From Haliotis rubra (taxonomy: Eukaryota), in the NCBI RefSeq assembly GCF_003918875.1, contig NW_025766990.1, positions 930,001-994,000 of the forward strand: a DNA stretch of 64,000 nucleotides, written 5' to 3'. The position numbers and the translations under genes are program-made. The notes beneath the pieces are model-generated. The model saw only the letters and a program-made list of their open reading frames with translations. It ran no database searches and was not told the DNA's origin. Below, piece by piece: positions 9,509 through 59,628 of the stretch; the stretch's first letter is position 1; each line of letters starts with the position of its first letter.

Positions 9509-10349
9509 GACTCGTTTGCTCTGGTTTTATACCCGTTTGGTATTCACGTTTTTAGCTTTGCATGTAAAACATGCAAATCACATTTGCACAAAATGGTGAA
9601 AACGCATGCATTGCATGCTGTATTTCCAAGTGGAAAACGTATTGTTCCTTATGTTCGATGTGTTTTCATGTGATGTTGATTGCAGCTGAATTTGGAATTT
9701 GGACACATAATGTAAAACCGTGGGTGTTCTGTTATCTGTTCATAGTCCCATGTTGTCATCGGTTTGAAGACATCATAGAACAATGAATAAAATGAGAAAA
9801 AAGTCTTTCCTTTTCGATACCATTTTTACAAAATATTCAACAAGATACAATATATTGAAGAATGTATAATTGTCGTCTGATCATACCTCTCAGCGAAAAC
9901 TTAAATATGTCTCAGATTGTCAGTGAAAATGAAAACCCAGCCTTGCCTATCCTCGAAAGCAAATTCCGTTTGATGTACATGGGAAAAGACATGGCTGTGA
10001 AAAGTATATGAACGGCTTCACTGAAAATCAATGATGACTCTAAGTGTTCGTGGGAAGGTTAAACAAATTATTATTCCTTACATGATTTACGTCATTTGTA
10101 TTTTTAGATATGACTGCCTTTTCGTCAAGAATGGAACGTGATGGACGAGGCTACAAGTTAGTATTATACGAGTTAATTGTTTATCATGGAACCTTTTCGT
10201 TGGATGCTGCTTTTAGAAACGTTTTATAATATTTTTTCTTGCAATATTCATTGATATTATAAAGTACACCCATAACATCCATCATGTCCCTTATTGTAAT
10301 TTTGGGGTCGAAGTCGATTTTTAACTATAAGATATTTAACTCTGAATGA

Positions 10350-15056: not shown

Positions 15057-15323
15057 GCAGTTGAGTGACACACCCGCCACACGATTACTGGATTGGTGAC
15101 AAAACGGCTTTGAATACATTCAGACATGTAGTGAGCCAGATCGATTCATACGTACGATTACAAAGCTCCAATCTGTTTCCCAATATAGATTTGCTATCTG
15201 TTACAACTTCTGTCCTATCAACAACGCCGTCATATGTGTCTCGTGAGGCAACTGTGAGACAATCTTTCCAACTGCACAATTTAACTGTATACATGCCAGT
15301 CGTCATGTAGGAGTGGTCGGGGT

Positions 15324-15351
15324 ATGGCCTGTCTTCTCAGTGACCGAACAG
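15324..15351 (+). CDS. Schlafen-like gene, proposed first coding exon (MACLLSDRT)
   Basis: ATG then 9 codons +1 nt, donor CAG|GTATGG; phase 1 matches the acceptor at 15860. Confidence 0.55.
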
Positions 15352-15859
15352 GTATGGCAGATATACGTTCATGTAAATGTTCAGCAAATAGTGAAATTTC
15401 ATGTCTGATTTATTCAAGCATGGGCATAAGAGAACTTATATTTATATGTATGAAAGGAAAATCAACAGAGAAAGGAAACCTTGCTTAAAAAAGACTGTGT
15501 TTGACTTATGTTTATAAAGGGAATCAATTCCATATTATTTTTAGTCTCCAGGACTCCAGTGTCTCCATGTTTTGTATCATATTTGATTACAACATGGGAT
15601 TAAGTGGTATCTCTTACCAAGTTAATGTACTTGATGTTAGTAGCTGGGTGACTGAAATGTTCAGTAGGACTGCGTTGTGATATCTCAGAGCTGTCACAAA
15701 ATTACTGACGTTCTAGTTAAGTGCGTATACACCCTTCCGGGTTTAGAAAACTACATCGTAAATTGAACTAATCATTCATAAAAAGGACTTGACAATTAAC
15801 TTCCTTAGCGTTAAGTATTATATTACAAGTGGTCGCTATATATCATTTGTGTGTTTCAG

Positions 15860-16917
15860 AGAAAGACAAGTGCATCTGTTGGACCGCTTATAAATCCTTT
15901 GAAAGATCGTGCACAGAACCTAATATCATTTTGTTCCATACAAAAGAATCAACTTTTACCGAAAAGGATAAATATAAGAAGCGTTTAGTACTTCGGGAGT
16001 TTGAAAAGCGTGTGTCTGCATTGCGCAATACCGAGGGTGGTATTTTGTTTATTCACATTACTGACCGAACAAATAACAATAGCAACCTATCAGAATTTGA
16101 CCAGTTTGTTGACAAAAGTTTGAAAAGTTTGATTGCTGATGGTTGTTCATTTGTGGAGTCCTACTCTCGAAAGTGGCTCAGTCTTCAACATAATATCCTG
16201 ATTTTAACGGTTGCCAAAGGATCGTGTGTCTCCTCTGTGAGTCTCAACACCAAGGTGTGCTCAGATCATGGAATTGAGTTTCCATCAACGTTTGAACTGA
16301 CCAGATTTGTTTCAAAAGGACAACTTGATGAGAGTGAAGCCACAGTGAGGCCAGAGCCTCGTCCTTTCCACCTGAAAAGCCAAGACTGGGTGGAAGACAG
16401 ACACATTCAACTTAAAGCCTTTTTTGAACCCACCTTTCGTACGTATTGTGAAGGACACAAACACAATCGGTCTGATAAGAACTTTGTTGACTACGTTTGG
16501 AATAACCTACGTTTTCGGGAATACCTATCAGGTATGTCCAAAGTGCCACGTGGTGGCTCATATTATGTTGGAATAGCTGAGTGGAAAAAACAAGTTGTCC
16601 CAGATGTTCATGGAATTCATTTGAAGGGTTCAAAGACGGACATCACAAAACTCTTCAAGCAGAAACTGACCACTGTTACTGTTTACAGTTTTGATGACAA
16701 ATTCAAAAGCGGACAAAAGGAGGAAAATATCATTGAAATCCAATTCCACAATCTGAAGACAGGAAATTCCGTTCTTGAACTTGCAGTTAAACATGTAAAG
16801 GGCATAGTTTTCTATGACAATGGTCCACTTGCATACAAAATAGATGATAAATCTAAAATTGTAAAAATTGCTAAAGATCAGTGGATGAACAAAGTGAGAT
16901 CCTGGAGGTTGAAATAG
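15860..16917 (+). CDS. Schlafen-family (AlbA_2) RNase-fold domain exon
   Basis: Acceptor TGTGTTTCAG|AG; both Schlafen lobe signatures, RVSALRNTEGGILFIHI and YLSGMSKVPRGGSYYVGIAE, plus EDRHIQLK and VLELAVKHVKGIVFYDNGPLAY; frame closes at TAG 16915-16917, phase-1 donor after 16921. Confidence 0.85.
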
Positions 16918-17700
16918 GCAGGTATATAACGAAGGTATTTGGTGGCTGTGGCAACTGCCTGCTGTGTTACTAGGTTCACCTTGACTTAGTTGCATTGTAT
17001 GGCATTTTGAACAGCTTCATAAACATTCCAGTTCTTTTATGGTGTAAAGTGATTGGATCCTGACTACAATGAGTGATTCAGATTCCTACCTGTCTTATCC
17101 ATCGGACGAAGAAGACATGCCTTGCTGTCCCTTTGACCTGGACCCCATGAGTTCAGAATCATCTGATGAAAGTCCCGGCGATGTGTCATTCAAAGGTAAA
17201 ACATTTCCCCATACTTCGTTTCTGGAAGCCTCAGCAATTATAACAAATCTTCTCGCATTTGCAGTGTGATACTATTACCGCAGGTTTTGCTGCTTACTGC
17301 AACCAGCTAAGGCAAAGCTACAGGTGAATGGTGGTACAGATAAATGAACTCAATGTCCCAAGCGGTAGGCAGATATTTTACCCTGATCGTGGTTCATCGT
17401 TGGCTGGAATCTCCTGATGTCAAGGACCTCTCGTAGTTTCCTTTGACGCCGGTTGTTGGTGAACAGGACTGTGGTACCTTCCCACATGATTGTATGGTCG
17501 TCGTTCTTAATTATGTGGTCGGAAATTGCGGAATTCTGGCCTAGTTGGCCTTTAGACCCTTTATTTGAATTTATTCAAATTTATGACAACTCATTAAAGA
17601 CTGGTGAATGTCGTGTTTGGCTACTGTCCTTAACTGACAGAACCATAAACCCGATAAAACAGTCAGCGTCAAGGTTTCAGTCCCATCTTAAATACCTGGG

Positions 17701-17799
17701 TGGGCACAATGTGTTAAGCCCATTTCTGGTGTCCCCCGCCGTGATATTGCTGGAATATTGCTAAAAGCGGCGTAAAACTAAACTCAGTTAGTCAGTCAG
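17701..17799 (+). mobile_element. SINE family A, 5'-truncated, intronic
   Basis: 3' part of family A; exact 12-bp TSD TAAATACCTGGG at 17689-17700 and 17800-17811. Confidence 0.9.
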
Positions 17800-18157
17800 T
17801 AAATACCTGGGCAATACATGTCTTCATTTCTTTGAGAAATATATACTCTTAGGAGGATGCTGATGTCGGGGTATCAGATTTTACTTTGCATTGAGCCGAT
17901 GGTTAGTGATGTCATATGCATGTCTACTATTTATACACTGAAGGCCAAATGACTCTGACAGCAGTGATAAGAACCCCACACATACTGTAGTTTAAATGCA
18001 GTCAGTTCCTGCTGGGGAAAACCTTTTTCCATGCTGAAGAACAACTGTATAAGAGACGGTTCTCCATTTTGCTTCGAGAAACATTAATATAAAATCATGT
18101 ACCTTCACGTGGATTGTTCTGGAGTCAACTTAAATCTTAAACAACAATTGTTTACAG

Positions 18158-18235
18158 ATCTAAAGGGGCAAGCGGATGCACATTTCGAAAATCCTGATAC
18201 GAGTTACTTGGATAAATTGCAGTCAAGACAAAGAG
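18158..18235 (+). CDS. Schlafen-like gene, 78-nt linker exon
   Basis: TTGTTTACAG|AT...AGAG|GTATTT, phase 1-1, open (DLKGQADAHFENPDTSYLDKLQSRQR). Confidence 0.6.
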
Positions 18236-18805
18236 GTATTTATTCTTTCACAACATTTGCGTTTACAGATATTTATTGATGGTATGTTTACATATTGGGG
18301 AAAATGTGACTCCTACAGAAACTGGAGTCGAACTGAATTCAATTATAATCTCCCTGAGAGAAGGATCATTAGTGATACTCACTGCAGTTGCCCAAAGGAA
18401 ACAGGCCGTGTTCCTCTGAGACATCGGCCTTTCTAACTGTAGGTTCGAATCTCTGCTCCTTGCACCTTATGGCCAAAGGCATCGATCCAATGACTAACGG
18501 ACCCCAAACGCTGCACTAGCGTAAGAAAATTACATTGACTGAGTAGCATTTGAACAAACCCATGAACATATAGTACTCGAAAAACTATGGAATTGGATGA
18601 GGTCACTGGTCAAGACGCGTCCAAGATATACATGATCTACACATGTCCTTTTAGAACATTTTGAAAACTTAAGGGCTTAAATGCAGTACCCCTGATCAGA
18701 CAACTTTTAAAGATCTATGCAGTGATACCCTCTGTAGAAGGAGGAGAGGTATAGACAGCAAAAGCTAGAACTAATAGTAAATATAATTATTTATTTTTTC
18801 TCCAG

Positions 18806-19463
18806 GTGCCTGTGTCTTTTTCCCACTGAAGCTGACAAACTACTTATCAGACAATCATCAGTGTATAATTGATGGTTTGGAGGATTTGGGTTATGACCAG
18901 TCTTTCGTGTACATCGGGAGGTCTCTTGTTGTCAGCCTGAACGTGGACAATGACAGAATCAAAGTACCCAAACAGCTTATATGCGATACCATCATATTTG
19001 CACACAACAGACCTGTTACTGTTCTCAGTTTTGTGAGAACGAATGACAAACCAGAGAAGTATGCCTTGTACAATTCACTTCTATCGAGGCACATTACAAA
19101 GATCATGCGGACATCACTGCAGGAAAATATCAGTGTCATAAGTGGAGTTGTTGAAGAGCAAGGTGAAATCAAGAAAAGAATTGAAGAGTTTGAAGACAGG
19201 GCAACATTGTTTAGCATAGCAGGATCCCACGAAATGAACGCATCACGGAGTAGAGCTGCAGCAAAATCAATCCTGCAGACAGCCGCTGAATGTAAAGCAG
19301 CATCTTTGATAGACACAGGACCTGAAAAGGAAGGCACTGTACGCACGTTGAGCGAACTGGAATTTAAACAGATGATCGATGTGATTGACGATGCAGGCGT
19401 TTGTTACCAGCCCTCCATCACCTTTCAGAACAACAGGGTGGCTCTAGAATCTACAGTCTTGAG
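18806..19463 (+). CDS. Schlafen-like gene, SWADL/SWAVDL-type middle-domain exon
   Basis: Strong acceptor TTTTTTCTCCAG; SFVYIGRSLVVSLNV...LICDTIIFAHNRPVTVLSFV parallels the SLFN motif LIFSRSWAVDL...VICDALLIA..SPPILYT; donor GAG|GTAAAA, phase 2. Confidence 0.75.
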
Positions 19464-19551
19464 GTAAAAAGGCAAACCAGTACAGTGCTAAACGTCTCAT
19501 AGGTTTCATAGGGTCACTATAAACACGCATCCCAAGTTCGTATTATTACCA

Positions 19552-19797
19552 TCCGTAAAGGTCCGGGTTAGAATATTGATCTACAGTAACCCACGCTTGT
19601 CGTAAGAGGCGACTAACGGGATCGGGTGGTCAGGCTCCCTGACTTGGTTGACTCATGTCATCGGTTCCCAATTGTGCAGATCGATACTCATGATGTTGAT
19701 CACTGGATTGTCTGGTCCAGACTCGATTATTTACAGACCGCCGCCATATAGTTGCAATATTGCTGAGTGCGAAGTAAAACTAAACTCACTCACCCAC
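19552..19797 (+). mobile_element. SINE family B, full length, intronic
   Basis: TCCGTAAAGGTCCGGGTTAG...CTTGTCGTAAGAGGCGACTAACGGG...CTCACTCAC; 13-bp TSD TCGTATT(AT/GC)TACC at 19538-19550 and 19798-19810. Confidence 0.9.
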
Positions 19798-19963
19798 TCG
19801 TATTGCTACCTAGCATTTAGTATCATAACCAGTCTTGAATGTGTTACAGTAAAACGTAATACCTGGTGTGCGCACAATGCACAACTCTAAACATCTGCTA
19901 CCCTATACAATTAATCCATGGAAGTAGGGATTGTATATTCGCATGACCTGGTTTCGTTTTCAG

Positions 19964-20067
19964 GAAACACTATCCAAAGTTGGATATTGGACCAGTCATT
20001 GTGTCAAGTCTTCCGGTAGCAGGTGACAAAGATTCGCTGAATAGTGAGAGAAGCGTGTCAGTTTCAG
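19964..20067 (+). CDS. Schlafen-like gene, downstream exon
   Basis: GTTTCGTTTTCAG|G...TCAG|GTAAGA; open in the phase (2) supplied by the previous exon. Confidence 0.6.
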
Positions 20068-20481
20068 GTAAGAATCAGTCTCCATCCTTTTAATCGATGT
20101 CTTGCATATGAGGACCACTCTGAAACAAGGAACAGTATCAGAGATGCATTGTGGAACCTGTTTTATTGATTAGGAATATTTATACATCGTATACACACGT
20201 GTTGACGAGGAAGGTTGTGCTTTCACCTCAGAAGGGAAATTTTGCCATCAGCTCAGCAAACGCAAAGGAGGTATGCACTCTTTCTTGAACATAGTTGTTT
20301 GGCTCTATGAACACGTGCCATGTAAACCATGTAAATCTATTTAGGATGTTAAATTGATAATCTGAGACAGTAAGATCCATTATCAGGAACCCTGTAAGTT
20401 TGAATAACAAGCTTATTAATATTTTCTTTCAATTGTAAGATCACGCTAATCGTATTTTACGTGTTTTGGTGTATTTTTCAG

Positions 20482-20616
20482 CTTCAGTTTCAGATTCCGA
20501 GTCAATCATTTTTAAAAATCAGGAAATGAGTCCATGCAATACGAACGCGCCAAACCCAAGAAAGGCTAAAGCGAGCTCAGTCAATGTTGGACAAAGTGAA
20601 CCCAAAATTGATGCAT
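20482..20616 (+). CDS. Schlafen-like gene, downstream low-complexity exon (3' end of gene unresolved)
   Basis: GTATTTTTCAG|CT...GCAT|GTAAGT, phase 1-1, open. Confidence 0.55.
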
Positions 20617-21389
20617 GTAAGTATCTTAACATACTAGCAGCGAACAGAAAATCATTTTTTATATCTGATAATGTAACTAAATGACATGTTTCCATGTCGA
20701 CTTTAAGGTAGACTTCCAGGTAATATGGAGATGATAAGAAGACGGCATGCTTATGACAGTTACGTTACGAGCCCAAATGCGCAAATGCGGTGCAGGAGCC
20801 AAGTACAAATGACACAAACTCAATGACGTGTATGCAGAGAGAACAACGGTGCATCACCGACCCACAGTCTGTCAAACGAACACGAAAGGCTTAAGAAATG
20901 GCGACTCTGCTGTCAAATCAAGGCATCAACCATTCCATGCCACACAGGCTCTAAGGGAGACATCAGGTGAATTTTGCAGGACAATGGTGTACTAAATCAG
21001 TGCGCTGTTGCAGAAAAGCCATCAAAACTCAAGAAGTTTGAAGACAGGGTTTATCCTGTTGGAAGGCATCAATCCTTGGCCATGACTTTTACGAAACGGT
21101 TCAGTGGATCTGATCCTTTCATCCCATATCTGTCAAATTACTCTTAACAACAACTAAATTGTTCCTCTAATGTGATTTTACCCCTTTCCAAATCACTACG
21201 GAATCGGTCTTCTCCATGACACACGCTTGAGTACAACGCTTCACAAGACGTGTGTAGGCGTGTTGATGTCTGTCAATACAGGGAATGTTAAATCTGGATT
21301 CGCTGTAAGAACAGTAGTCCTCCACCAGAACCGAAATTAACAGGACATGATTTCGGCACCAACTTTGACGATTTTCTTAACTATGTTGC

Positions 21390-22840: not shown

Positions 22841-23767
22841 ATGACCGTCATTTTCATTTTGGGGGGTAGTCAGTACAACTGATGTTTGCTGGTGCTGCTT
22901 GATTTATTTGTCTGTATGTCACGATGTGTCAGGTTTGTCACCACATTTTGATGACACTCTCAGTTCTATTATTTCCTAAAAACTGTTCTTTACATGTGCT
23001 ATATATCATTTGACCCTTTATTAACGACGTCTAGTTATACTACTGCTCCTACACATTTTAATTGCTATGATTGTATGAATTTATGTGTATGTTTAATGTA
23101 TGTGATATCACATGCCGTTTCTTTAATCATACTTATGTCTCTTGGTGTGAAGGCTTCAACTGCGATATGAGTAGCAGCCCTTCGTCTTATCCTGTGTCAA
23201 CAGAAATCTACCACTAGACAGCATAAAAGATACAAATCCACCAAGAACATCGATGTTAGAGGTCCTTTGGATACAAGAACCGCCGATGATGTTTACATTC
23301 CACTCAATGGGAATGACATTTGAAAACATTTTATACATGTAGCATCATGTTGATTCGTCTCAGTTTTCAAGAATGTAGTGATAGTACTCGAAACTTGTCA
23401 TGAGTTTTCACTTTGACTGGCGGTCAGAAGAATTTGAAGTATTAACAATCAAACTTAACACACACTTGAAAGACGTTTGAAAATATCAGGACAAGACTAG
23501 AATATATTAATAAAATACTTACAAACCTGCGAAAGGGAAGAATAACTTTGATAGGTAAATTTGTAACAATAATAAAGACCCTTGCTGGAAGTCATATATA
23601 GCCTGAACCGAACTTTCTTCAATTTTATATGGAATACAAAGGAGCTATAAGCCAACGATCTAACGTGATAAAGGAAAACAGAGAAGGTGGGCGTTGTTTA
23701 TATGAAAATATCAAACTTAAGATGCAGCCTTCGAAACCTAATATTGAAAGTCCAAAGAACTCAAATA

Positions 23768-42966: not shown

Positions 42967-44390
42967 TATGTATATATGTATATACTTAATTCTGCGTGGC
43001 TGAAAACATGTATTAAGCAATAGTAACCATATTTTCTGGTACCAACACCTCAAATCACATCAATACTTGGAGCGAATAAATGATTACGCGTGTACATTGC
43101 TTCTTACAATAGTCCAGCAAACTAAATAGATTCATTGTGTGTACTTAAACAGCGGAGTGCATGGGTTGATAGAGTGTTTCTGGTTTTGGATTCCATTTAA
43201 GTTTAGTAATATCATCGATAAATAATATATACGTCCTCCGGAGAGAGTAGTAAGTCCCAAAGTTTTCAAGGTAAATTTAAACCTACTATTATTTTTAATC
43301 GTAATATATATGTTCTTTTAAATTATGGCTTGATTATCTAAAATTGCTAACAGCTGAAGGGAGAGTGTAAATCCAGCTAGGGTCCACGCAGGAAGCAAAT
43401 GTACTGTTATCCAAAGGGTCCTTATTTAACTCCGCCCTTTTACCTGACAGGTAGTTGTGTTACCTGTCAGTTATCCCACACCTTGGAGGGCGTTTCTTTA
43501 CCGGAACTACGGTATACCCTCGAACTTCGGTCCTGACAATTCTGGATGTGCGAGAGGTACCGTGTCAGTACCCGAGGGCCCTTTGGACCTTTACCGTAGT
43601 TCCTCCAGCAACCACAAGACGATGATCTTCGTTCCACAGTTTTATTAACACTGCGTTGCTGGCCCAACCCACTCTATTTGTCACATAATTAAGAGACTTC
43701 AGCTGGAAAGCTTCAGTCTCAGTCGAAATGCTGGTGCTTTGAGTTTGTTTCTTAGTACGAAAGTAAGTGACAATCAGATGAGAGCTGATGCGCCCTAGAC
43801 CCCAGGCTTGGGGTTCCTAGGAGCACACTCGTTCTCGGCTTCAGGTCTCGTACCACTCTCTCGTCTCTCAGCTTTGCTCCAGCTTAAACCTGGGTTCCTA
43901 CGTCACAACCAACACCCTTTTCCATTTTTTCCATTGGTCAATAACCCATAACCTGACTATCTATCTATTCTACTCTCCCCTACCGTGAGGTGGATTCTCT
44001 CAGAGTCTCTCTCTCCCTAGCCATATATGACTTGTAGAGTACCAAGAACTGGTAGCTAGGTCCCCGGCCACGCCGCCCGTCTTGATAGTATAGTAGTTTT
44101 ACCTTACCTAAGCTATGAGTCACTTCACCTTGCCCCCATCAGCCCTAACGACCTACTTTCATGTTTATTACCTTCGTTACTGACTTTCACTTTACAACGT
44201 TATTAATCACTTCATATCTTAAATATATTATTAAATCCTCTCATAATTTGTATCTTATCACCTCTTAATCACCTGTTATTAATAATGTCAATTGTATATC
44301 TATTATTGCAGCAAGTACCATAATCGCATGCCTATATGAATGAATATCTGTCAAAAGAATTTTAATTTCTAATTTTATTGATCTATGATA

Positions 44391-47300
44391 ATCACTGCCC
44401 TAGAACTCTCTGTTCCAAATCATCATCCACTCTATCTCCTATCGATCTACCTACCCCCTTCGAATCGATCCATAGATCTCTACAAAATGTGCCTTGATGA
44501 ACTCCAAGAAGCATATTCTGCCTTGTCTGAAAGGAGCCCGGTAATCATCCTAGGCGACTTTAATGCAAAGATTGCAGGCCCAAGAGCAAACGTTAACCTT
44601 GACCAAAGAGCTAGCATGCTCGGGGAGCTCTTGTCAGAAAATTCACTAATCTCTATCAACATGCAGAGCTTCTGCACAGGCCCAGTGAATACCTTCTATG
44701 CATATACAGGAGGCCCCCAGACACCAATTGACCACATCGTAGTACCAACTGAGCTTATGTATATCATCCACTCGGCAGAAGTGATTGATGATAATCCACT
44801 CAACGTTTCCGACCATCACCCAGTTGTATGCCTTCTTGCAATTGACCTACCTAGTCAACCAGCTGCAAATCCTCCTATACGTAGACCAGCTTGGAACAAA
44901 GCCCTCCAGAACGGCTCAATCAAGGACTACACACATGCAGTCTCTAACTCCCTCTGGGGTAAGCAGCTGCCAGCTCTAGACTGTGACAGGGAAGATATTG
45001 AACACCTTACTGATATAATTACTATGGCCCTCACTATGGCTGCGTCTGACTGTCTTCCAGTGAGACATTTCAGGCGTTATCTAAGACCATACTGGAAGGA
45101 ACAAGTGAAAGACTTCCACGACCTGATGTTATCTTACAGACACAAATGGATTCTAGATGGGAGACCTAGAGGCATGACTTACACTAGCTTCCGTGACTAC
45201 AAGAAATCCAAAGACAAATTTCGAGCTGCTATGAAAGAAGCTGCAGCACTTTATGAAACAGAGCACTTCAACAATCTTGATAAACTATATGACATTGACC
45301 AGAAAACATTCTGGGCTCTCCTCAACAACAGAAACAAGAAATCACACATTTCAACCATAAGTGTATCAGGGAACCATACCACAGATTCCTTGGAAATCTG
45401 CCATGCACTCGCTGACCACATGAAGACTATATTCAGCAAAGGGGTAGATGATCACTTTGACCAGAACTTTAAAGACCATCTAGAAGGCAGAGTTGCTGAA
45501 CTAAAACATTGTACCTCTAACAAGATAATCGACGTCAAGTGCCTTCTGACCTCTCAGTCTGAGGTAAGCAAGCTTTGCAAATCTCTGAAAAACAACAAGG
45601 CCTGTGGTTTTGATGGAATCTACTATGAACACTTGAAACATGGAGGCTCAACTCTTCATTATTATCTTTCTGAATTATTCAACAGAATAATCACTACAGG
45701 TTCTATCCCATCCCAGTGGAAGAAAGGTATCATCATCCCAATCTTCAAAGGCGGAGGCAAACCAAGGACGTCCCCAGATTCATATAGAGGAGTGACTTTG
45801 TTGCCTGTTATGTCAAAACTTTTCGAACAGGTCATAGCGAACCGGATCCCACAATTCCAAGACTCCACGGATTTCCTGATCCTCTGCAATGCGGCTTCCA
45901 GAAAAGCCTCTCGTCGTCTCTTCATGCATCATTCCTCCTTCAGGAGACAGTCTACCACTACAAGGAACGGAATGACTCTCTGAAAGTGGTGTTCTTGGAC
46001 AGTAGTAAAGCCTTCGACACTGTGTGGCATGATGGGCTACTCTGGAAGTTGAAGGAGTTGAACATTCATCCAGGTGTGTGGCGCATTTTCTGCAACACAT
46101 ACCTGGAATGGAAAGTTGTGTTCTTGCCAATAATACTTACTCATCCTGGTTTAAACTCGACCGTGGGTGAGACAAGGTAGCGTCCTTTCTGCTAAACTCT
46201 ACTTGGTTTACATCAACGAGCTTCTGACAAACCTATCACATCTTAAGAAGGGAGCATTCGTACTGGATCTCCACCTCGCTGCTCCAACTCAGGCAGATGA
46301 TATCTCACTGATCAGCCCTATCACAGCTCATCTACAATCTATGGTAACAGAGTGCCAGAACTACAGTGCCAAATGGCAGTTCACATTCTCTCCTTCAAAA
46401 AGCAACGTATTGGTCTTCAATCCGCAAAAAAAACCAAGTGCAATATCAAACTTTACGGAAAGAAGTTACCTGAAGTGGACAACACAAAGCATCTTGGCAT
46501 TCTTCTCGACTCACACCTTAGCAGCCACACTCGAACATCAAACGCAAGTTCGAAGATGAAGTCAGCTGCAATGATGCTGATGAAATCAGGCCTACACAAC
46601 AGTGGGCTGAATCCAATTACCAGCTCCAATCTTGTCAAGTTCAGGTGTCTACCCAAAGCCTTGTTTGGGTGCGAATTGTGGTCAGGTTTGAAAAGAGCGA
46701 CATTATCACTGTCGAAAGGGCACAACGATTCTGTTTAAAGATGTGTCAGGGGCTCCCAAGAACTACTAGATCTGACATATGTAACTCCCTGATTGGATGG
46801 TACTCGGCAGAATCACATATTGACACAAAGAAGCTGTTTTTTCTTGGCTCCTTGTGTAACAGTAAGAAGCACCTACTTTGCTTCAAACTCTTTATCTCAC
46901 GCCTGTTTGCGTTTAGAAACTGCATATTGAAGACAAGAACAGGATTTATACCAGATATAGTTCATGTACTTGAAAAATACAAACTGAGGCACTTTCTCGA
47001 GAATTTTGTCTCCTCCGGCATCTTCATGAGTCAACTCTCCTGGAAGAAGATTGTAAAAGACTCTGTCATGGAATACGAGAAGTCCTCCTGGAACCAACGA
47101 ATGACATCAGATCCAGATCTCAGACACTTCAGGACATTACACCCTCGATAGAGCCACACCCAGCTTGGCTACTTGCCAAAAGATACCCCTCCTTGAAACA
47201 ACAATGCATCTTCACAGTACAATTGTGTGCTCTTTGGCGTCCTCACCGTGTGTATGGACCTTGTGATAAATGTAGTGTGAACTGTGCAGACCCCTTGATC

Positions 47301-50254: not shown

Positions 50255-50353
50255 CTGGTTCGATTCCCAACATGGATGCCAATTTCTTATTTCCGCTGCC
50301 GTAATATTGCTGAAAATATTGATAAAGCGGCGTAAAACTAAACTCACTCACTC
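50255..50353 (+). mobile_element. SINE family A remnant overlapping the stop codon of the adjacent gene
   Basis: GGTTCGATTCCCAACATGG...GCTGAAAATATTGATAAAGCGGCGTAAAACTAAACTCACTCACTC. Confidence 0.85.
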
Positions 50354-51741
50354 GATTGACAGAAGTTCTCAACTCTTCGCTGCAATGAAGCATTTTGAAA
50401 AACTAGTCTTCTACGTTCTGCAGTTGTTACGGTGTTTGTTTCCACCATTTGTCGAAGAGCACGTTCACGAGCTGCTTTTGGAAAATTAATTCCAAAATTG
50501 AAATTAGATTCCCGGTATCCATTGAGAAATATAGGATTTTCTATAGAGACCCTTCTGACTAAACTTTCTCGCCGAACTTCCTTAAAAGGATCATGACGAT
50601 ATCGATCCTGAGGCCTGACATAGTTGTAGATCCTCTTTCCTTTAAAAAGTATGTACCTCTTGTCATCTTTACTGGTATCAGCTGAGGGATCCGCATCCTC
50701 CTCACATATTGTCACATCTCCATTATTATCACCTGCGAGATCACATTTTGGACTCATGGCGACAGAAGCTTTCTTTGAATCATGAGACTCACTTTTACTT
50801 GGGTTGCTTGTTTGATTACTGTTTACCTGTTCAATGGTTGACGGGACACCTGTTTCGGGAACAGCCTTTTCTCGAATGACTGAGGTTAAATCCGTGGAAC
50901 AAACAGGATCCTGGTTGTTGAATTCCACTTCATCAAACCCGGATGGAGGATTAGCTCGATATTCCATTCCTGCAACTGAATGTGATCTATGTTTGCGATG
51001 CAGCATTTTAACCGCATCACCACCCCGTGTGCTTGGTTTTGTCACTGAAAGTGATCTTTGCTTCCTATTCCTCCTTATAACTGCAGCACCATCCTCTGTG
51101 TTTGTCCTTACAGATGACTGTAATCGTTGAGTTTCGTATTGAACAACATCTGTACCATCTTCCTTACTGTCTGCACTTTCAGAAGGATCATCTCTCACAT
51201 TATCTGTTTGCAAACGAAAAGCATGGCGTTTCTGTACTGGTGATGTTGTATTGCTTCTCTGGTCCCAGGAGGTCATTGGACGGGACACAGTGAGACTCTT
51301 CCCTCCCTGCCGTGATCCAGATGGTGCAGACTTGCAACCAACCCTGGGCAAGATTGGTCTGGAATCCTGGACACTTGGTCGTCGATACATATAAGGGTCA
51401 AATGGGTCGTTATATACGGCGTTGTAGGATGTCTCAGCGAACGTGAAAGCCCAGGGTTTTCGGAAATGCTTGGACAGGATTTGTTGGGATTTACAAATTG
51501 ACACATTTCCCTGGCAATATAGATCATCAACAACTGGACTTCTGCCGGATGTTCTGAATGTGTTTCGTCTGATGTGGAGAAGAGACTGCTTTTCCTTGAC
51601 CAGGGAGTCCTCCAGGAAGTGATGTTCTTGTTGAAGATGCTTCAGATGAAGATTAAGAGTTCTTTCCTCCTGGCGATTTTTTGCCCTTGCTAACACTTCA
51701 CCGTTTTTCAATGTGTTACCCCTAGGCATTCTTTTTGACAT
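50344..51741 (-). CDS. Uncharacterised 465-aa protein: N-terminal coiled coil, disordered S/R-rich middle, C-terminal helix
   Basis: Uninterrupted 1.4-kb ORF from ATG in non-repetitive DNA; heptad segment EVLARAKNRQEERTLNLHLKHLQQEHHFLEDSL; loosely CCDC190-like N-terminus (unverified). Confidence 0.8.
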   Translation of the reverse strand: MSKRMPRGNTLKNGEVLARAKNRQEERTLNLHLKHLQQEHHFLEDSLVKEKQSLLHIRRNTFRTSGRSPVVDDLYCQGNVSICKSQQILSKHFRKPWAFTFAETSYNAVYNDPFDPYMYRRPSVQDSRPILPRVGCKSAPSGSRQGGKSLTVSRPMTSWDQRSNTTSPVQKRHAFRLQTDNVRDDPSESADSKEDGTDVVQYETQRLQSSVRTNTEDGAAVIRRNRKQRSLSVTKPSTRGGDAVKMLHRKHRSHSVAGMEYRANPPSGFDEVEFNNQDPVCSTDLTSVIREKAVPETGVPSTIEQVNSNQTSNPSKSESHDSKKASVAMSPKCDLAGDNNGDVTICEEDADPSADTSKDDKRYILFKGKRIYNYVRPQDRYRHDPFKEVRRESLVRRVSIENPIFLNGYRESNFNFGINFPKAARERALRQMVETNTVTTAERRRLVFQNASLQRRVENFCQSSE

Positions 51742-57070: not shown

Positions 57071-58503
57071 GATCAATATACAATCATAGAGCATGTTTCC
57101 AAAGTAATATCACCCCGAAATGGAACATCCCATACTTTTTGTAGTGCATATAGCGTGGATCTAGAAATCAAATACATGTTTGACGTGCATTGATTTAAGT
57201 TTTAAGCTACCACTAGAGACTGCATGCTAAGCTGACACAGTGAACGAATGTATAATACGAAAAGCGTCACATCGGATTAACGTCCTGAACGGATAACTCA
57301 AAAACACTCACAACATGTCATTCAATCCACGATAATAGGCGCGTAAGGAGACAACACCTCACAGCAGTGATAACATGCGAAAGCCATGGCTTGATACCTG
57401 GGTGACGCTCTACCTTCGGTCCAACGACCAATCCTAATATTATCAGTCAACGATAAGGAATACATTCATTCTGGCTGTCACATGTGTGACTACTGCGTGG
57501 TGACAAATGTTCACACGATATTTGGGATCACGCTGAGCTGGATATTAACTTTATAAACAGTTAATCTTCAATCAGAATTGCGAACTGTCCTCTGTAAATA
57601 TTTCCGTGAATGGTTGATATGATCCTGTTTGTTGTGGCGAAGGTAAATCACCGAACGAATCCCTCAGAGATATATGCATGTCATCATTAATTGTCATCGG
57701 GTATTATCTGTAGTCAAACAAGGCAATTTGTTTTGCAAGTCACAATACATACTTATGTGAATTACTGAAGTTGCTGATTAAAGCAGATTAAAAACATGTT
57801 CCTGTTTAGGCAAAGATTCCATCTCAAACATAACGCCTATGCCATTTACAGAATATATTAAGAACATTTTGAGAATATATTCCAGTGTTGTTTTGTGTGC
57901 ACTGTCAAAACATTCTCTCGTTTACATTACACTTCATGTTGATCTTTATAATTGATATTATAATTTTACATGTACTGTAAGAATATAAATGTGGCAAATG
58001 GAAGAAAGATATTAAAATTTGAAAAATATTCCCGACCGTAATATTTAGCTTGTATGTTTTGCATTGGTTTTGGTTTGTTTGTGTTTTCTTGGTTTGTTTT
58101 GTTTTTTGTAACCGTGACTATTAATCATCGATATCGACTTCATTGATTATTGTCAAGAGAGGGCACATTAGCTGGATCATTTAGTCATTTGTCTAGTCAA
58201 TATACCTTACTCTCCGCATGGGTCGTAGTAAATTAAAAAGATAAAGATTTTGAAATCTAGCTGACGATTATACGTGTCTCATATACGCCGAAGATAAATG
58301 GCATTCAGTAGAACACATTTCTCTGTCTATATAGTTTTGTCTATATCTGCTTGGTGTTACGCCGAATATTACGAGGGCATTCTGAGGAGGTGGAGGATGT
58401 GACAATATTTGTGGAATAACGATCCATAAATGATCGACATACACATCATCTTGGAACTGAATGAAAGGATAATTATTAGCGTCATCATCACACATTGAGA
58501 AGG

Positions 58504-59628
58504 ATGGACGATGGATACCACAGCAGATGGCCAGAGACGAGGCAGATGTTGGCCATAACAAGGCACTCTACCAGTAGTTCCAGCAGCAGAAGCTTCTCGA
58601 GACATGACTCTGATAGAAGGGATAGGAAGTCGCAGTTCCATCTTGCCGAGGAGGACAGGAGACTTCCACCACCCGCTGTGTTCTGGAGCGACAATGAGAG
58701 AGATGCATATAGGAAAAACAGAGTCATACAGAGTAAGTTAAATTCTGATTTGGATGACATCCGGATGCATAAACAGCATTCAACGCGGGTGATTAGATGT
58801 GACGCGATGAGATTCAGGTTACGTTCTTCACGATTTCCTCATCTTGTGCCCATGAAATTTGGTGTTTGGGGAAACTACAAGCAGATGCCTCGGTCAATAC
58901 AGTCGGGGCGTGGTGGGAATATAAGTAGCCTGAGGTGTTCACCGGTTGGAGATGACACTTCATCACCTACGGTATATTCTTCACCTATCCGACAAACTTC
59001 GACGGTTCATCTTACACCTACCAGGCAGTCTACGAATTTGTCCTTGCACAGAAATAGCAGCCTCAGAAGTTCCATTGGAGAGGCACAGGGTATTGACCAT
59101 AAACGACCAGAGACGAGTCCTGTCCTGGTTCGGGATGTACAATATCATACCAAACATAACGAGTCGGGTGACCGGATGGAAGCATCTCATAATGGTTCTA
59201 TACATCAACAATTACAACAAGATTCAGATCAAAATTCTGACAATGTACTGAACAATGACATTAGTACTTCATCACAGGATAATACTGAAGAAGCATGTGG
59301 AAATAAGAGTGTTCCTTCATCCATATTATCCAAAAGGAAAGCTCCAAGAAAGACAGTACGATGGAGTAATCCAGAATATTCCTTTCTGAGGTCGAGGACA
59401 ACGTTGGACGATCCATCCAAGGTGATCCCAAGTAAAAGTAAATTGGCATCTCTCTACAGTCCGATTCGTAACTTGGAGAACGCTTTGACATCTGAAAAGC
59501 TGAGGTTCCAAGACAGCCAAACTAAAGTGTCTGATTACGTGCGCAAGCTTGCAATATGTGGCTTTTCGAGACAGCTGGATACATGTCGTGATCTGGAGCA
59601 CAAACGAACAACTACCACTACAACATAA
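58504..59628 (+). CDS. Uncharacterised 374-aa protein: coiled-coil motif plus S-rich disordered region
   Basis: Uninterrupted 1.1-kb ORF, first ATG at 58504; ERDAYRKNRVIQSKLNSDL motif shared with the 50344..51741 protein. Confidence 0.75.
   Translation: MDDGYHSRWPETRQMLAITRHSTSSSSSRSFSRHDSDRRDRKSQFHLAEEDRRLPPPAVFWSDNERDAYRKNRVIQSKLNSDLDDIRMHKQHSTRVIRCDAMRFRLRSSRFPHLVPMKFGVWGNYKQMPRSIQSGRGGNISSLRCSPVGDDTSSPTVYSSPIRQTSTVHLTPTRQSTNLSLHRNSSLRSSIGEAQGIDHKRPETSPVLVRDVQYHTKHNESGDRMEASHNGSIHQQLQQDSDQNSDNVLNNDISTSSQDNTEEACGNKSVPSSILSKRKAPRKTVRWSNPEYSFLRSRTTLDDPSKVIPSKSKLASLYSPIRNLENALTSEKLRFQDSQTKVSDYVRKLAICGFSRQLDTCRDLEHKRTTTTTT

What the first reader, a model, noticed from the sequence alone, without database searches (positions are those of the whole stretch)
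15324..20616. Schlafen gene with one in-frame TAG at the RNase-domain/SWADL boundary
Seen: six GT-AG exons (28+1062+78+658+104+135 nt; phases 1,1,1,2,1,1) join into one frame of ~688 codons with a single interruption, TAG at 16915-16917 (AAA TAG GCA G|gt), ending 4 nt before the donor. Downstream exons have no stops or frameshifts. Known: vertebrate Schlafens come as short (domain only), intermediate (+SWADL) and long (+helicase) forms. Inference: either a recent nonsense allele, a conversion to a 361-aa short-form Schlafen, or readthrough/editing (UAG to UIG, Trp) toggling short and long forms of an immune nuclease. The nearby GTGAGA donor at 16894 is phase 0 and meets stops in the next two exons, so it does not rescue the frame.
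Basis: partly seen in the sequence, partly recalled or inferred. Interest (0 to 1): 0.7.

Follow-up and report, generated by a model that had tools for sequence, protein, structure and literature searches.

The report
Split abalone Schlafen: normal stop codon
The "in-frame TAG" is the ordinary, conserved stop codon of a short abalone Schlafen-core protein, and the downstream exons belong to a second reading frame (the Schlafen middle domain) that starts 151 bases later on the same exon, so this is a two-part Schlafen gene, not a broken or recoded one.

Summary
The sequence facts hold: the six GT-AG exons, their lengths and the single TAG at 16915-16917 are as described. The reading does not hold.

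- **Ordinary stop.** TAG ends a 357-aa protein that RefSeq already annotates (Haliotis rubra LOC124283631 isoform X3). The H. asinina orthologue stops at the same codon, and all 35 paralogous loci I examined stop within 0-47 codons of it (34 within 21).
- **Different exon.** Contigs from RNA-like runs cross the TAG and the proposed 16921 donor unspliced. The exon runs 15860-17195.
- **Second frame.** RefSeq lists its products as isoforms X1 and X2 of the same gene.
- **Folds.** The ORF1 model matches only Schlafen cores (Foldseek E 1.5e-15). The ORF2 model matches only Schlafens that carry the linker/SWADL domain (E 3e-8).

The locus is therefore a Schlafen split at the core/linker boundary into two cistrons. 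This layout recurs across a large Haliotis family, with gaps of 9-486 nt in all three relative frames, which excludes readthrough as a family-wide mechanism. How ORF2 is translated is not shown.

The scan had already noted an "apparently split Schlafen" elsewhere in this genome (s1-347425).

The parts
10141..10156 (+). Alternative first coding exon of ORF1 (ATGGACGAGGCTACAA|gt). It gives the MDEATK start of RefSeq isoform X3.
   Evidence: Pattern search. P0001 sequence.
15324..15351 (+). It is not the start used by the RefSeq ORF1 model.
   Evidence: Contigs of the RNA-like runs X1-X3 give depth in bin 15250-15448.
15860..17195 (+). The real large exon. It holds the ORF1 body, its stop, the spacer and the start of ORF2.
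   Evidence: RNA-like contigs are continuous over 16358-17163, 16724-17060, 17031-17163 and 16979-17195. Depth is zero in the flanking introns 15449-15846 and 17240-17637.
15862..16914 (+). ORF1 coding body (351 codons): a complete two-lobed Schlafen core.
   Evidence: 100% identical to XP_046575578.1. A family profile hits the SLFN11 N-domain 7fex at E 2e-5. AlphaFold model pLDDT 84.5; the top 25 PDB matches are all Schlafen cores.
16915..16917 (+). TAG, the natural stop codon of ORF1.
   Evidence: The RefSeq protein ends ...RSWRLK here. H. asinina has TAG at the same codon. All 35 paralogous loci examined stop nearby.
16918..17068 (+). 151-nt spacer between the two ORFs. It has no AATAAA or ATTAAA, and contains TAA at 16927-16929 in the ORF1 frame.
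   Evidence: Same length and 76% identity in H. asinina.
17069..17195 (+). Start of ORF2 (MSDSDSYLSYPSDEED...VSFK), Ser/Asp/Glu-rich, ending at the donor AAAG|gtaaaa in phase 1.
   Evidence: Identical to the N-terminus of XP_046575577.1 and XP_046575576.1. The junction 17195>18158 is carried by X1 contig 5.
18158..18235 (+).
   Evidence: Residues 43-68 of P0008. RNA depth.
18806..19463 (+). ORF2 exon encoding the Schlafen linker (SWADL / GTPase-like) domain. The local motif is RSLVVSL where SLFN14 has RSWAGDV.
   Evidence: Residues 70-287 of P0008. Profile A2 hits SLFN14 residues 362-482. Model residues 65-240 have pLDDT above 90, and the top 13 PDB matches are all linker-bearing Schlafens.
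19964..20067 (+).
   Evidence: P0008/P0029 sequence. Conserved in H. asinina and in the tandem paralogue L013.
20482..20616 (+).
   Evidence: P0029 sequence.
23153..23217 (+). Last coding exon of ORF2 isoform X1 (...CFNCDMSSSPSSYPVSTEIYH, stop TAG 23215-23217).

Best explanation
This is Haliotis rubra gene LOC124283631, a Schlafen encoded in two pieces. ORF1 (357 aa from the 10141 start exon) is a complete two-lobed Schlafen core and ends at TAG 16915-16917, its normal stop. After a 151-nt spacer on the same exon (15860-17195), ORF2 starts at ATG 17069. It runs through the exons at 18158, 18806, 19964, 20482 and 23153 and gives a 371-388 aa protein: an acidic Ser/Asp-rich head followed by the Schlafen linker (SWADL) domain, with no helicase. 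The two-ORF layout is the standard state of a large abalone-specific family, not damage to this copy. Shown: the stop is conserved, the exon is continuous in RNA-like contigs, both folds are Schlafen parts, and both ORFs are under similar constraint. Inferred: the two proteins are made from one locus, probably from one dicistronic message, and act together as a non-covalent equivalent of an intermediate-type Schlafen. How ORF2 is translated is not determined. The options are reinitiation after ORF1 (plausible where the gap is 9-17 nt), internal entry, or a separate shorter mRNA from an internal promoter or splice site.
For: - **Stop annotated and conserved.** XP_046575578.1 (357 aa) ends at the TAG. 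The H. asinina orthologue XP_067675932.1 (358 aa, 76% identical) ends at the same codon, and its DNA reads TAG GCAGGTA.
- **Paralogues.** All 35 paralogous ORF1 loci examined end in a stop 0-47 codons after the aligned end, 34 of them within 21 codons.
- **ORF2 follows.** Sixteen of the first 16 paralogous loci, and about 10 of 20 more, have an ATG-led Ser/Asp/Glu-rich ORF 9-486 nt downstream. Exon-4-like domains lie downstream on the same strand at many of the paralogous loci, 7 of those 16 among them.
- **One gene in RefSeq.** ORF1 (X3) and ORF2 (X1, X2) carry one GeneID.
- **RNA.** Runs X1-X3 give zero depth in the introns but carry contigs that are continuous across the TAG, the spacer and the ORF2 start. 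One contig links 16979-17195 to exons 3 and 4.
- **Folds.** ORF1: Foldseek E 1.5e-15, TM 0.62-0.68, against SLFN11/12/13/5/14 cores. ORF2: E 3e-8 to 8e-6 against SLFN14/5/12/11 chains that include the linker; the next hit is E 0.03, and no core-only structure is matched. Profile hits agree.
- **Constraint.** dN/dS between H. rubra and H. asinina is 0.58 for ORF1 and 0.52 for ORF2 exon 4.
- **Other species.** NCBI models call an ORF2-type gene 151 nt (H. asinina) and 185 nt (H. rufescens) after the ORF1 stop.
Against: - Contigs cannot prove a single RNA molecule, because two overlapping transcripts would assemble the same way.
- The H. asinina and H. rufescens annotations call the two ORFs as separate genes.
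- Fifteen ATG triplets precede the ORF2 start on the exon, so simple scanning from the cap would not reach it. No translation mechanism has been demonstrated.
- The joints table was truncated (945 rows not shown), so minor use of the 16921 donor is not excluded.
- The list of base differences was also truncated, so I cannot certify that the about 5% divergent allele in the RNA runs keeps TAG.
- About half of the second batch of paralogues show no obvious ORF2 within 500 nt.
- The Pfam SLFN_AlbA_2 score is just under its cut-off (24.4 against 25.3 bits).
Confidence: 0.85

Rival explanations
1. Two independent, overlapping transcription units. ORF1 mRNA ends in or after the spacer. ORF2 has its own mRNA, started from a promoter inside the ORF1 coding region or made by splicing an upstream exon to an acceptor near the ORF1 stop. 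On this view the apparent dicistron is an assembly of overlapping RNAs.
For: NCBI calls the two ORFs as separate genes in H. asinina and H. rufescens. Contigs cannot show single molecules. Fifteen upstream ATGs make cap-dependent scanning to ORF2 unlikely. An AG lies immediately before or after the stop in several copies (CAG|TAA in L004/5/10, CAG|TAG in L008/12; TAGGCAG in the window).
Against: Gaps of 9-17 nt in many paralogues leave no room for a polyadenylation site plus a promoter. The window spacer has no AATAAA or ATTAAA. Contig depths are about equal on ORF1, the spacer and the ORF2 exons in each run. RefSeq merges both ORFs into one gene in H. rubra.
Confidence: 0.3
2. One reading: programmed readthrough or A-to-I recoding of UAG toggles between a short and a longer fused Schlafen.
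For: With the 16921 donor the downstream exons would be in frame. The GCAG|GTA donor-like sequence is conserved in H. asinina and in the tandem paralogue.
Against: The donor is not used in any displayed RNA contig. In the unspliced exon TAG is followed by TAA after three more codons. ORF2 has its own conserved ATG and lies in another frame. The gap length modulo 3 takes the values 0, 1 and 2 across paralogues, and stop codons differ (TAA, TAG, TGA), so no family-wide readthrough product exists.
Confidence: 0.03
3. One reading: a recent nonsense allele or a decaying pseudogene, or an assembly error at 16915-16917.
For: Some family members are broken. Stops or frameshifts occur in several hits, and the tandem copy has a 323-bp deletion.
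Against: The same stop is present in the orthologue, the tandem copy and all 35 paralogous loci examined. ORF1 is otherwise open, annotated and transcribed. dN/dS is below 1 for both ORFs. The DNA run X6 covers the site, and no listed difference falls on it.
Confidence: 0.02

Closest known systems
Mammalian intermediate (group II) Schlafens, such as SLFN12 (core + linker/SWADL, no helicase)
   Same: The same two domains in the same order. The ORF1 model aligns with the SLFN12, 11, 13, 5 and 14 cores. The ORF2 model aligns with the linker domain of SLFN12, 14, 5 and 11. There is no helicase.
   Different: In abalone the two domains are separate polypeptides, encoded by two cistrons divided by a stop, a 151-nt spacer and a new ATG. 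ORF2 has an extra acidic Ser/Asp-rich head. Sequence identity is only 12-17%. This copy has Gln where SLFN11 has Glu214. The SWADL letters are not kept (RSLVVSL).
Short (group I) Schlafens, such as mouse Slfn1/2, and the abalone 'stand-alone Schlafen-core' genes noted earlier in this scan (s1-347400, s1-344896)
   Same: ORF1 alone is a core-only protein of about 360 aa.
   Different: Here, and in many paralogues, a linker-domain ORF follows directly on the same exon, so the core is not truly stand-alone.
Conserved dicistronic animal genes (from my own knowledge: Drosophila stoned A/B and Adh/Adhr, mammalian SNURF-SNRPN and MOCS2)
   Same: Two non-overlapping ORFs with related or cooperating products lie on one transcript-like unit, and the arrangement is conserved between species.
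   Different: Here the arrangement is multiplied across dozens of paralogues of an immune-type family and splits what is one polypeptide in vertebrates. Single-molecule RNA evidence and evidence for translation of the second ORF are lacking.

Membership tests
Schlafen family | Two-lobed Schlafen core fold (N- and C-lobe, AlbA_2-like) | tested here: met
   AlphaFold model pLDDT 84.5, pTM 0.82. The top 25 Foldseek PDB hits are all Schlafen cores, E down to 1.5e-15 over about 355 columns. The family profile aligns to SLFN11 residues 43-336, E 2e-5.
Schlafen family | Pfam SLFN_AlbA_2 (PF04326) at or above its gathering score | tested here: not met
   24.4 bits against a cut-off of 25.3, E 4.4e-5, N-lobe only. 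This is a near miss, and the fold evidence outweighs it.
Schlafen family | Acidic catalytic residues of the RNase site (SLFN11 E209/E214/D252, from my own knowledge of the structures) | tested here: inconclusive
   Placed by motif, not by structural superposition. This copy reads EDRHIQLK and GIAE, so the first Glu is kept, the second is Gln, and there is a Glu near the third site. Among 23 family members the second site is Glu in 12 and Gln in 11. RNase activity of this copy is therefore doubtful.
Schlafen family | Linker (SWADL / Pfam SLFN_GTPase-like) domain after the core | tested here: met
   The fold is present, but in ORF2. The top 13 PDB hits are linker-bearing Schlafens, E 3e-8 to 8e-6. 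Profile A2 hits SLFN14 residues 362-482, E 0.02. PF21026 is weakly hit by a relative (P0011, 24.1 bits against 27). The SWADL letters themselves are not conserved.
Schlafen family | Core and linker on one polypeptide | tested here: not met
   Stop, 151-nt spacer and a new ATG in another frame. RefSeq gives separate proteins.
Schlafen family | C-terminal superfamily-1 helicase (long forms only) | tested here: not met
   ORF2 is 371-388 aa. There is no Pfam hit and no confident structure after residue 240. This feature is not required for short or intermediate forms.
Schlafen family | Zinc finger in the core | not tested
   Not examined here. The earlier scan note s1-347400 says the family lacks it.
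Programmed stop-codon readthrough or recoding | Open, in-frame, conserved coding sequence directly after the stop | tested here: not met
   TAA follows four codons after TAG in the transcribed exon. ORF2 is in a different frame. The gap modulo 3 varies across paralogues.
Nonsense allele or pseudogene | Sense codon at the homologous site in orthologues and paralogues | tested here: not met
   A stop is present in H. asinina, in the tandem copy and in all 35 paralogous loci examined.
Dicistronic eukaryotic gene | Both ORFs on one mature RNA molecule | tested here: inconclusive
   RNA-like contigs are continuous across both ORFs and spliced downstream, and RefSeq uses one GeneID. Contigs cannot prove single molecules.
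Dicistronic eukaryotic gene | The second ORF is translated | not testable with these tools
   Only indirect support: dN/dS 0.52 and open frames across species and paralogues.

The most novel reading that the evidence does not exclude
Across dozens of abalone paralogues, a Schlafen core and its SWADL-domain partner are translated from a single dicistronic mRNA. Translation of the partner would be by termination-reinitiation where the gap is 9-17 nt, and by internal entry or a related route where it is longer. The products would assemble into a two-subunit Schlafen, letting the family mix nuclease cores (Glu or Gln at the active site) with different partner modules such as SPRY, CARD-like, GIMAP or ankyrin tails. 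That would be a conserved family of operon-like immune genes in a mollusc.
Probability: 0.25. Interest if true: 0.7.

Novelty: new variant of a known kind. Interest (0 to 1): 0.4.

Why it matters
For the finding as written, the result is deflationary. There is no premature stop, no recoding switch and no null allele, and the TAG is the annotated end of a RefSeq protein.

What remains of interest is the gene architecture. Vertebrate Schlafens join the RNase core and the SWADL linker in one chain, and structures show these domains packed together. Abalone keeps the same two folds as neighbouring cistrons on one exon, conserved between species and multiplied across a large family.

If both proteins come from one mRNA, this is a rare, family-wide dicistronic arrangement in an animal immune-type gene family. 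It would also be a natural experiment on whether the core and linker must be covalently joined.

It also bears on annotation. Pipelines treat the pair inconsistently, as "isoforms" that share no residue in H. rubra and as two genes in H. asinina and H. rufescens. Readers of raw sequence will keep mistaking the stop for a lesion.

Tried and rejected
- **Misreading, corrected.** I first thought the window had an extra C near 17090 that frameshifted the ORF2 start. That was my double reading of base 17100 at the seam. One search shows the frame is intact from ATG 17069 (corrected in note 3).
- **Intron removing the stop.** GT is not conserved at the stops of the paralogues. For example L009 reads CACTAA, and L016, L006 and L018 have no GT.
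- **Small intron inside the spacer (16922 to about 17048).** No conserved acceptor in H. asinina, and the RNA contigs keep the spacer.
- **Leaky scanning to ORF2.** Fifteen ATGs lie upstream on the exon.
- **Mobile-element origin of the two-ORF unit.** Copies are 30-40% identical at protein level, carry introns at matching places and are annotated host genes in four Haliotis species.
- **Pfam on ORF2 exons and on 17 relatives.** Nothing at threshold.
- **Literature.** Searches for Schlafen with mollusc, Schlafen with bicistronic, Schlafen with invertebrate and AlbA_2, and dicistronic with gastropod found no description of this arrangement.
- **The look-up of encoding contigs.** No record for the window's own protein.
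- I did not search or fold the joined spliced model. Exons were searched separately by reference, and the full ORF2 was handled through the database protein P0008. The only joining was a frame and stop count inside a script.

Full report
**What is in the sequence.** The window is Haliotis rubra (blacklip abalone), contig C2100:930001-994000 of a 1.38-Gb assembly. Joined in a script purely to count frame and stops, they give 688 codons with one stop, TAG at 16915-16917.

**The TAG is the normal end of an annotated, conserved protein.**
- A word search with the 351 codons before the TAG returned XP_046575578.1, [quoted passage not shown]. It is 357 aa, 100% identical, and ends ...RSWRLK exactly at the TAG.
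- The H. asinina orthologue XP_067675932.1 (358 aa, 76% identical) ends at the same codon (...RSWRMQ). Its DNA reads TAG GCAGGTACATG.

**The stop holds across the family.**
- The genome holds at least 125 exon-level matches to ORF1.
- I examined 35 paralogous loci. In every one the ORF ends in TAA, TAG or TGA 0-47 codons after the end of the alignment, and within 21 codons in 34 of them.
- A recent nonsense allele, a pseudogene and an assembly error are therefore all excluded. The tandem copy 58 kb upstream also carries the identical TAGGCAGGTATATAACG.

**The exon model behind the "in-frame" reading is not the one seen in RNA.**
- I laid four public runs on 15250-21200.
- X6 behaves as DNA, with depth in all 30 bins. 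X1-X3 behave as RNA. They have zero depth in 15449-15846, 17240-17637, 17837-18035 and the other introns (apart from two SINE-like repeats), and depth on the exons. These introns serve as the silent-stretch control.
- Their contigs run without a break over 16358-17163 (X3), 16724-17060 and 17031-17163 (X2), and 16799-17007 (X1). They therefore cross the TAG and the proposed donor at 16921.
- X1 contig 5 (346 letters, depth 6.87) lies on 16979-17195 and then leaves. Its remaining 129 letters fit exon 3 (78 nt) plus the first 51 nt of exon 4. A contig of that same depth ends 13 letters after 18844, and the bin depths agree.
- The real exon is therefore 15860-17195, and the junctions are 17195>18158 and 18235>18806.
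- Limits: these are contigs, not reads, so they cannot prove a single RNA molecule. The joints and differences tables were truncated, so I cannot exclude minor use of the 16921 donor. I also cannot certify the TAG in the about 5% divergent allele that the runs carry.

**A second ORF starts on the same exon.**
- ORF2 begins at ATG 17069, 151 nt after the TAG: MSDSDSYLSYPSDEEDMPCCPFDLDPMSSESSDESPGDVSFK. It ends in phase 1 at AAAG|gtaaaa and joins exon 3 in frame.
- An exhaustive HMMER search with exon 4 found XP_046575577.1 (371 aa). Its cluster also holds XP_046575576.1 (388 aa). The last coding exon of X1 is at 23153-23217.
- RefSeq thus places two proteins that share no residue under one gene.
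- In H. asinina the ORF2 orthologue is called as a separate 482-aa gene that starts 151 nt after the ORF1 stop. In H. rufescens a paralogous pair is called 185 nt apart, and the second gene starts MTSSSEGNLSSYSDD....

**The two-ORF layout is a family trait.**
- All 16 paralogous loci of the first batch have an ATG-led Ser/Asp/Glu-rich ORF after the ORF1 stop. About 10 of 20 in a second batch do as well.
- The gaps are 9, 11, 13 (six copies), 17 (four copies), 38, 46, 55, 94, 107, 143, 155, 156, 166, 223, 282, 348 and 486 nt.
- Exon-4-like domains lie downstream on the same strand at many of the loci, 7 of the first 16 among them.
- The gap takes all three values modulo 3 and the stop codon varies, so readthrough cannot give a family-wide fusion.
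- In this copy, reading past TAG on the transcribed exon meets TAA after three more codons.
- Gaps of 9-17 nt leave no room for a polyadenylation site and a promoter. The window spacer has no AATAAA or ATTAAA.

**What the two ORFs are.**
- *ORF1.* Pfam SLFN_AlbA_2 scores just under its threshold (24.4 against 25.3 bits). A seven-member profile aligns to the SLFN11 N-terminal domain (7fex) over residues 43-336, E 2e-5. An AlphaFold model built from 23 family sequences (pLDDT 84.5, pTM 0.82) has Schlafen cores as its top 25 PDB matches (SLFN11, 12, 13, 5, 14), with E down to 1.5e-15 and TM 0.6-0.7.
- *ORF2.* No Pfam family is hit. A 17-member profile puts three SLFN14 chains on top, aligned to residues 362-482, the linker domain that holds SWADL; abalone RSLVVSL aligns with RSWAGDV. 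The AlphaFold model is confident for residues 65-240 (pLDDT above 90). Its top 13 PDB matches are all Schlafens that include the linker (SLFN14, 5, 12, 11; E 3e-8 to 8e-6). The next hit is at E 0.03, and no core-only structure is matched.
The locus is colinear with an intermediate-type Schlafen but split into two cistrons. There is no helicase.

**Constraint.** Between H. rubra and H. asinina, dN/dS is 0.58 for ORF1 (dN 0.139, dS 0.238) and 0.52 for ORF2 exon 4 (dN 0.103, dS 0.199). My rough chi-square on the implied substitution counts gives p of about 0.006 and 0.014. Both ORFs look functional and similarly constrained.

**Mechanism, with what is shown and what is inferred.**
- Shown: two ORFs on one transcribed exon, both conserved, both Schlafen parts.
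- Inferred: they are co-expressed, and the products act together as a non-covalent Schlafen.
- Not shown: how ORF2 is translated. Fifteen ATG triplets precede it on the exon, which argues against leaky scanning.
- Reinitiation after ORF1 is plausible for the 9-17-nt gaps.
- A separate ORF2 mRNA, from an internal promoter or from an acceptor near the stop, remains a live rival at about 0.3.
- RNase activity of this particular copy is doubtful. Its motif reads EDRHIQLK where SLFN11 has ESQSIEFK, so the second catalytic Glu is Gln. Twelve of 23 relatives have Glu and 11 have Gln. This was placed by motif, not by superposition.

**Relation to earlier notes and to the literature.**
- The scan has noted the same family elsewhere in this genome: stand-alone Schlafen-core genes with recurrent Gln (s1-347400, s1-344896), SWADL-domain genes with dead P-loops fused to SPRY or GIMAP (s1-329464 and others), and one unfollowed note of an "apparently split Schlafen" (s1-347425).
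- My tests agree with them. They add that the core genes are often not stand-alone but the first cistron of a pair.
- Four literature searches found no description of a split or dicistronic Schlafen.

**Rule notes.** The joined spliced model was not sent to any search or folding tool. Exons were searched by reference, and the whole ORF2 was handled through the database protein.

**Verdict.** The recoding, null-allele and short-form-conversion readings are not supported. The residual interest is the family-wide split of a Schlafen into two adjacent cistrons. This is a new variant of a known kind and needs single-molecule RNA and translation data.

Noticed in passing
L013:3380-3440 (G000:C2100:885000-894000), equivalent to window 16589-16911: The tandem paralogue 58 kb upstream has a clean 323-bp deletion that removes the last third of ORF1 and shifts its frame. 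Its spacer and ORF2 are intact. They are more similar to the window copy (94% DNA identity) than ORF1 is (88.7%).
   Followed up: partly
window 16171-16193: Nine base differences within 23 nt of ORF1 are shared by the RNA-like runs X1 and X2 and by the DNA run X6. Across the exon the run contigs differ from the assembly by about 4-5%. This looks like a divergent haplotype or a gene-conversion patch in the N-lobe/C-lobe connector.
   Followed up: no
window 17638-17836 and 19429-19826: Two intronic SINE-like repeats ending in a CTCACTCACT tail have enormous summed depth in both the RNA-like and the DNA runs. They dominate the joint and loose-end tables.
   Followed up: no
ORF1 residue 189 (window about 16411-16413) and 22 relatives: The second catalytic Glu of the Schlafen RNase motif is Gln in this copy and in 11 of 23 family members, and Glu in the other 12. 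This recurrent two-state site suggests active and inactive (or differently active) cores.
   Followed up: partly
G000:C2100:926248-929011 (just left of the window), minus strand; L015: Another ORF1+ORF2 pair lies head-to-head with the window gene. Its ORF1 carries stops and frame breaks (1 TAA, and the match is split into pieces). Its ORF2 exon is open.
   Followed up: partly
window 44385-45983 (+): A 532-aa open frame with an endonuclease/reverse-transcriptase N-terminal domain (Pfam Exo_endo_phos_2, E 6e-8), probably a LINE-type retrotransposon fragment. The open frames at 50344-51741 (-) and 58495-59628 (+) have no Pfam match.
   Followed up: partly
P0011, P0020, P0023 (H. rufescens and H. 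cracherodii, about 1340-1360 aa); P0013; P0024; P0028: ORF2-type SWADL domains occur twice in tandem in about 1350-aa proteins, with a Walker-A-like GPGTGATT that lacks the lysine. They also occur next to weak, below-cut-off CARD and SPRY matches and clear ankyrin-repeat matches, so the partner module is highly combinatorial in Haliotis.
   Followed up: no
window 20605-20616 and 23153: RefSeq isoform X2 (…SEPK|MLQLRYE) needs exon 6 to end two bases after AAA, where the genome shows TG rather than GT. This is either a non-canonical donor or a model artefact.
   Followed up: no
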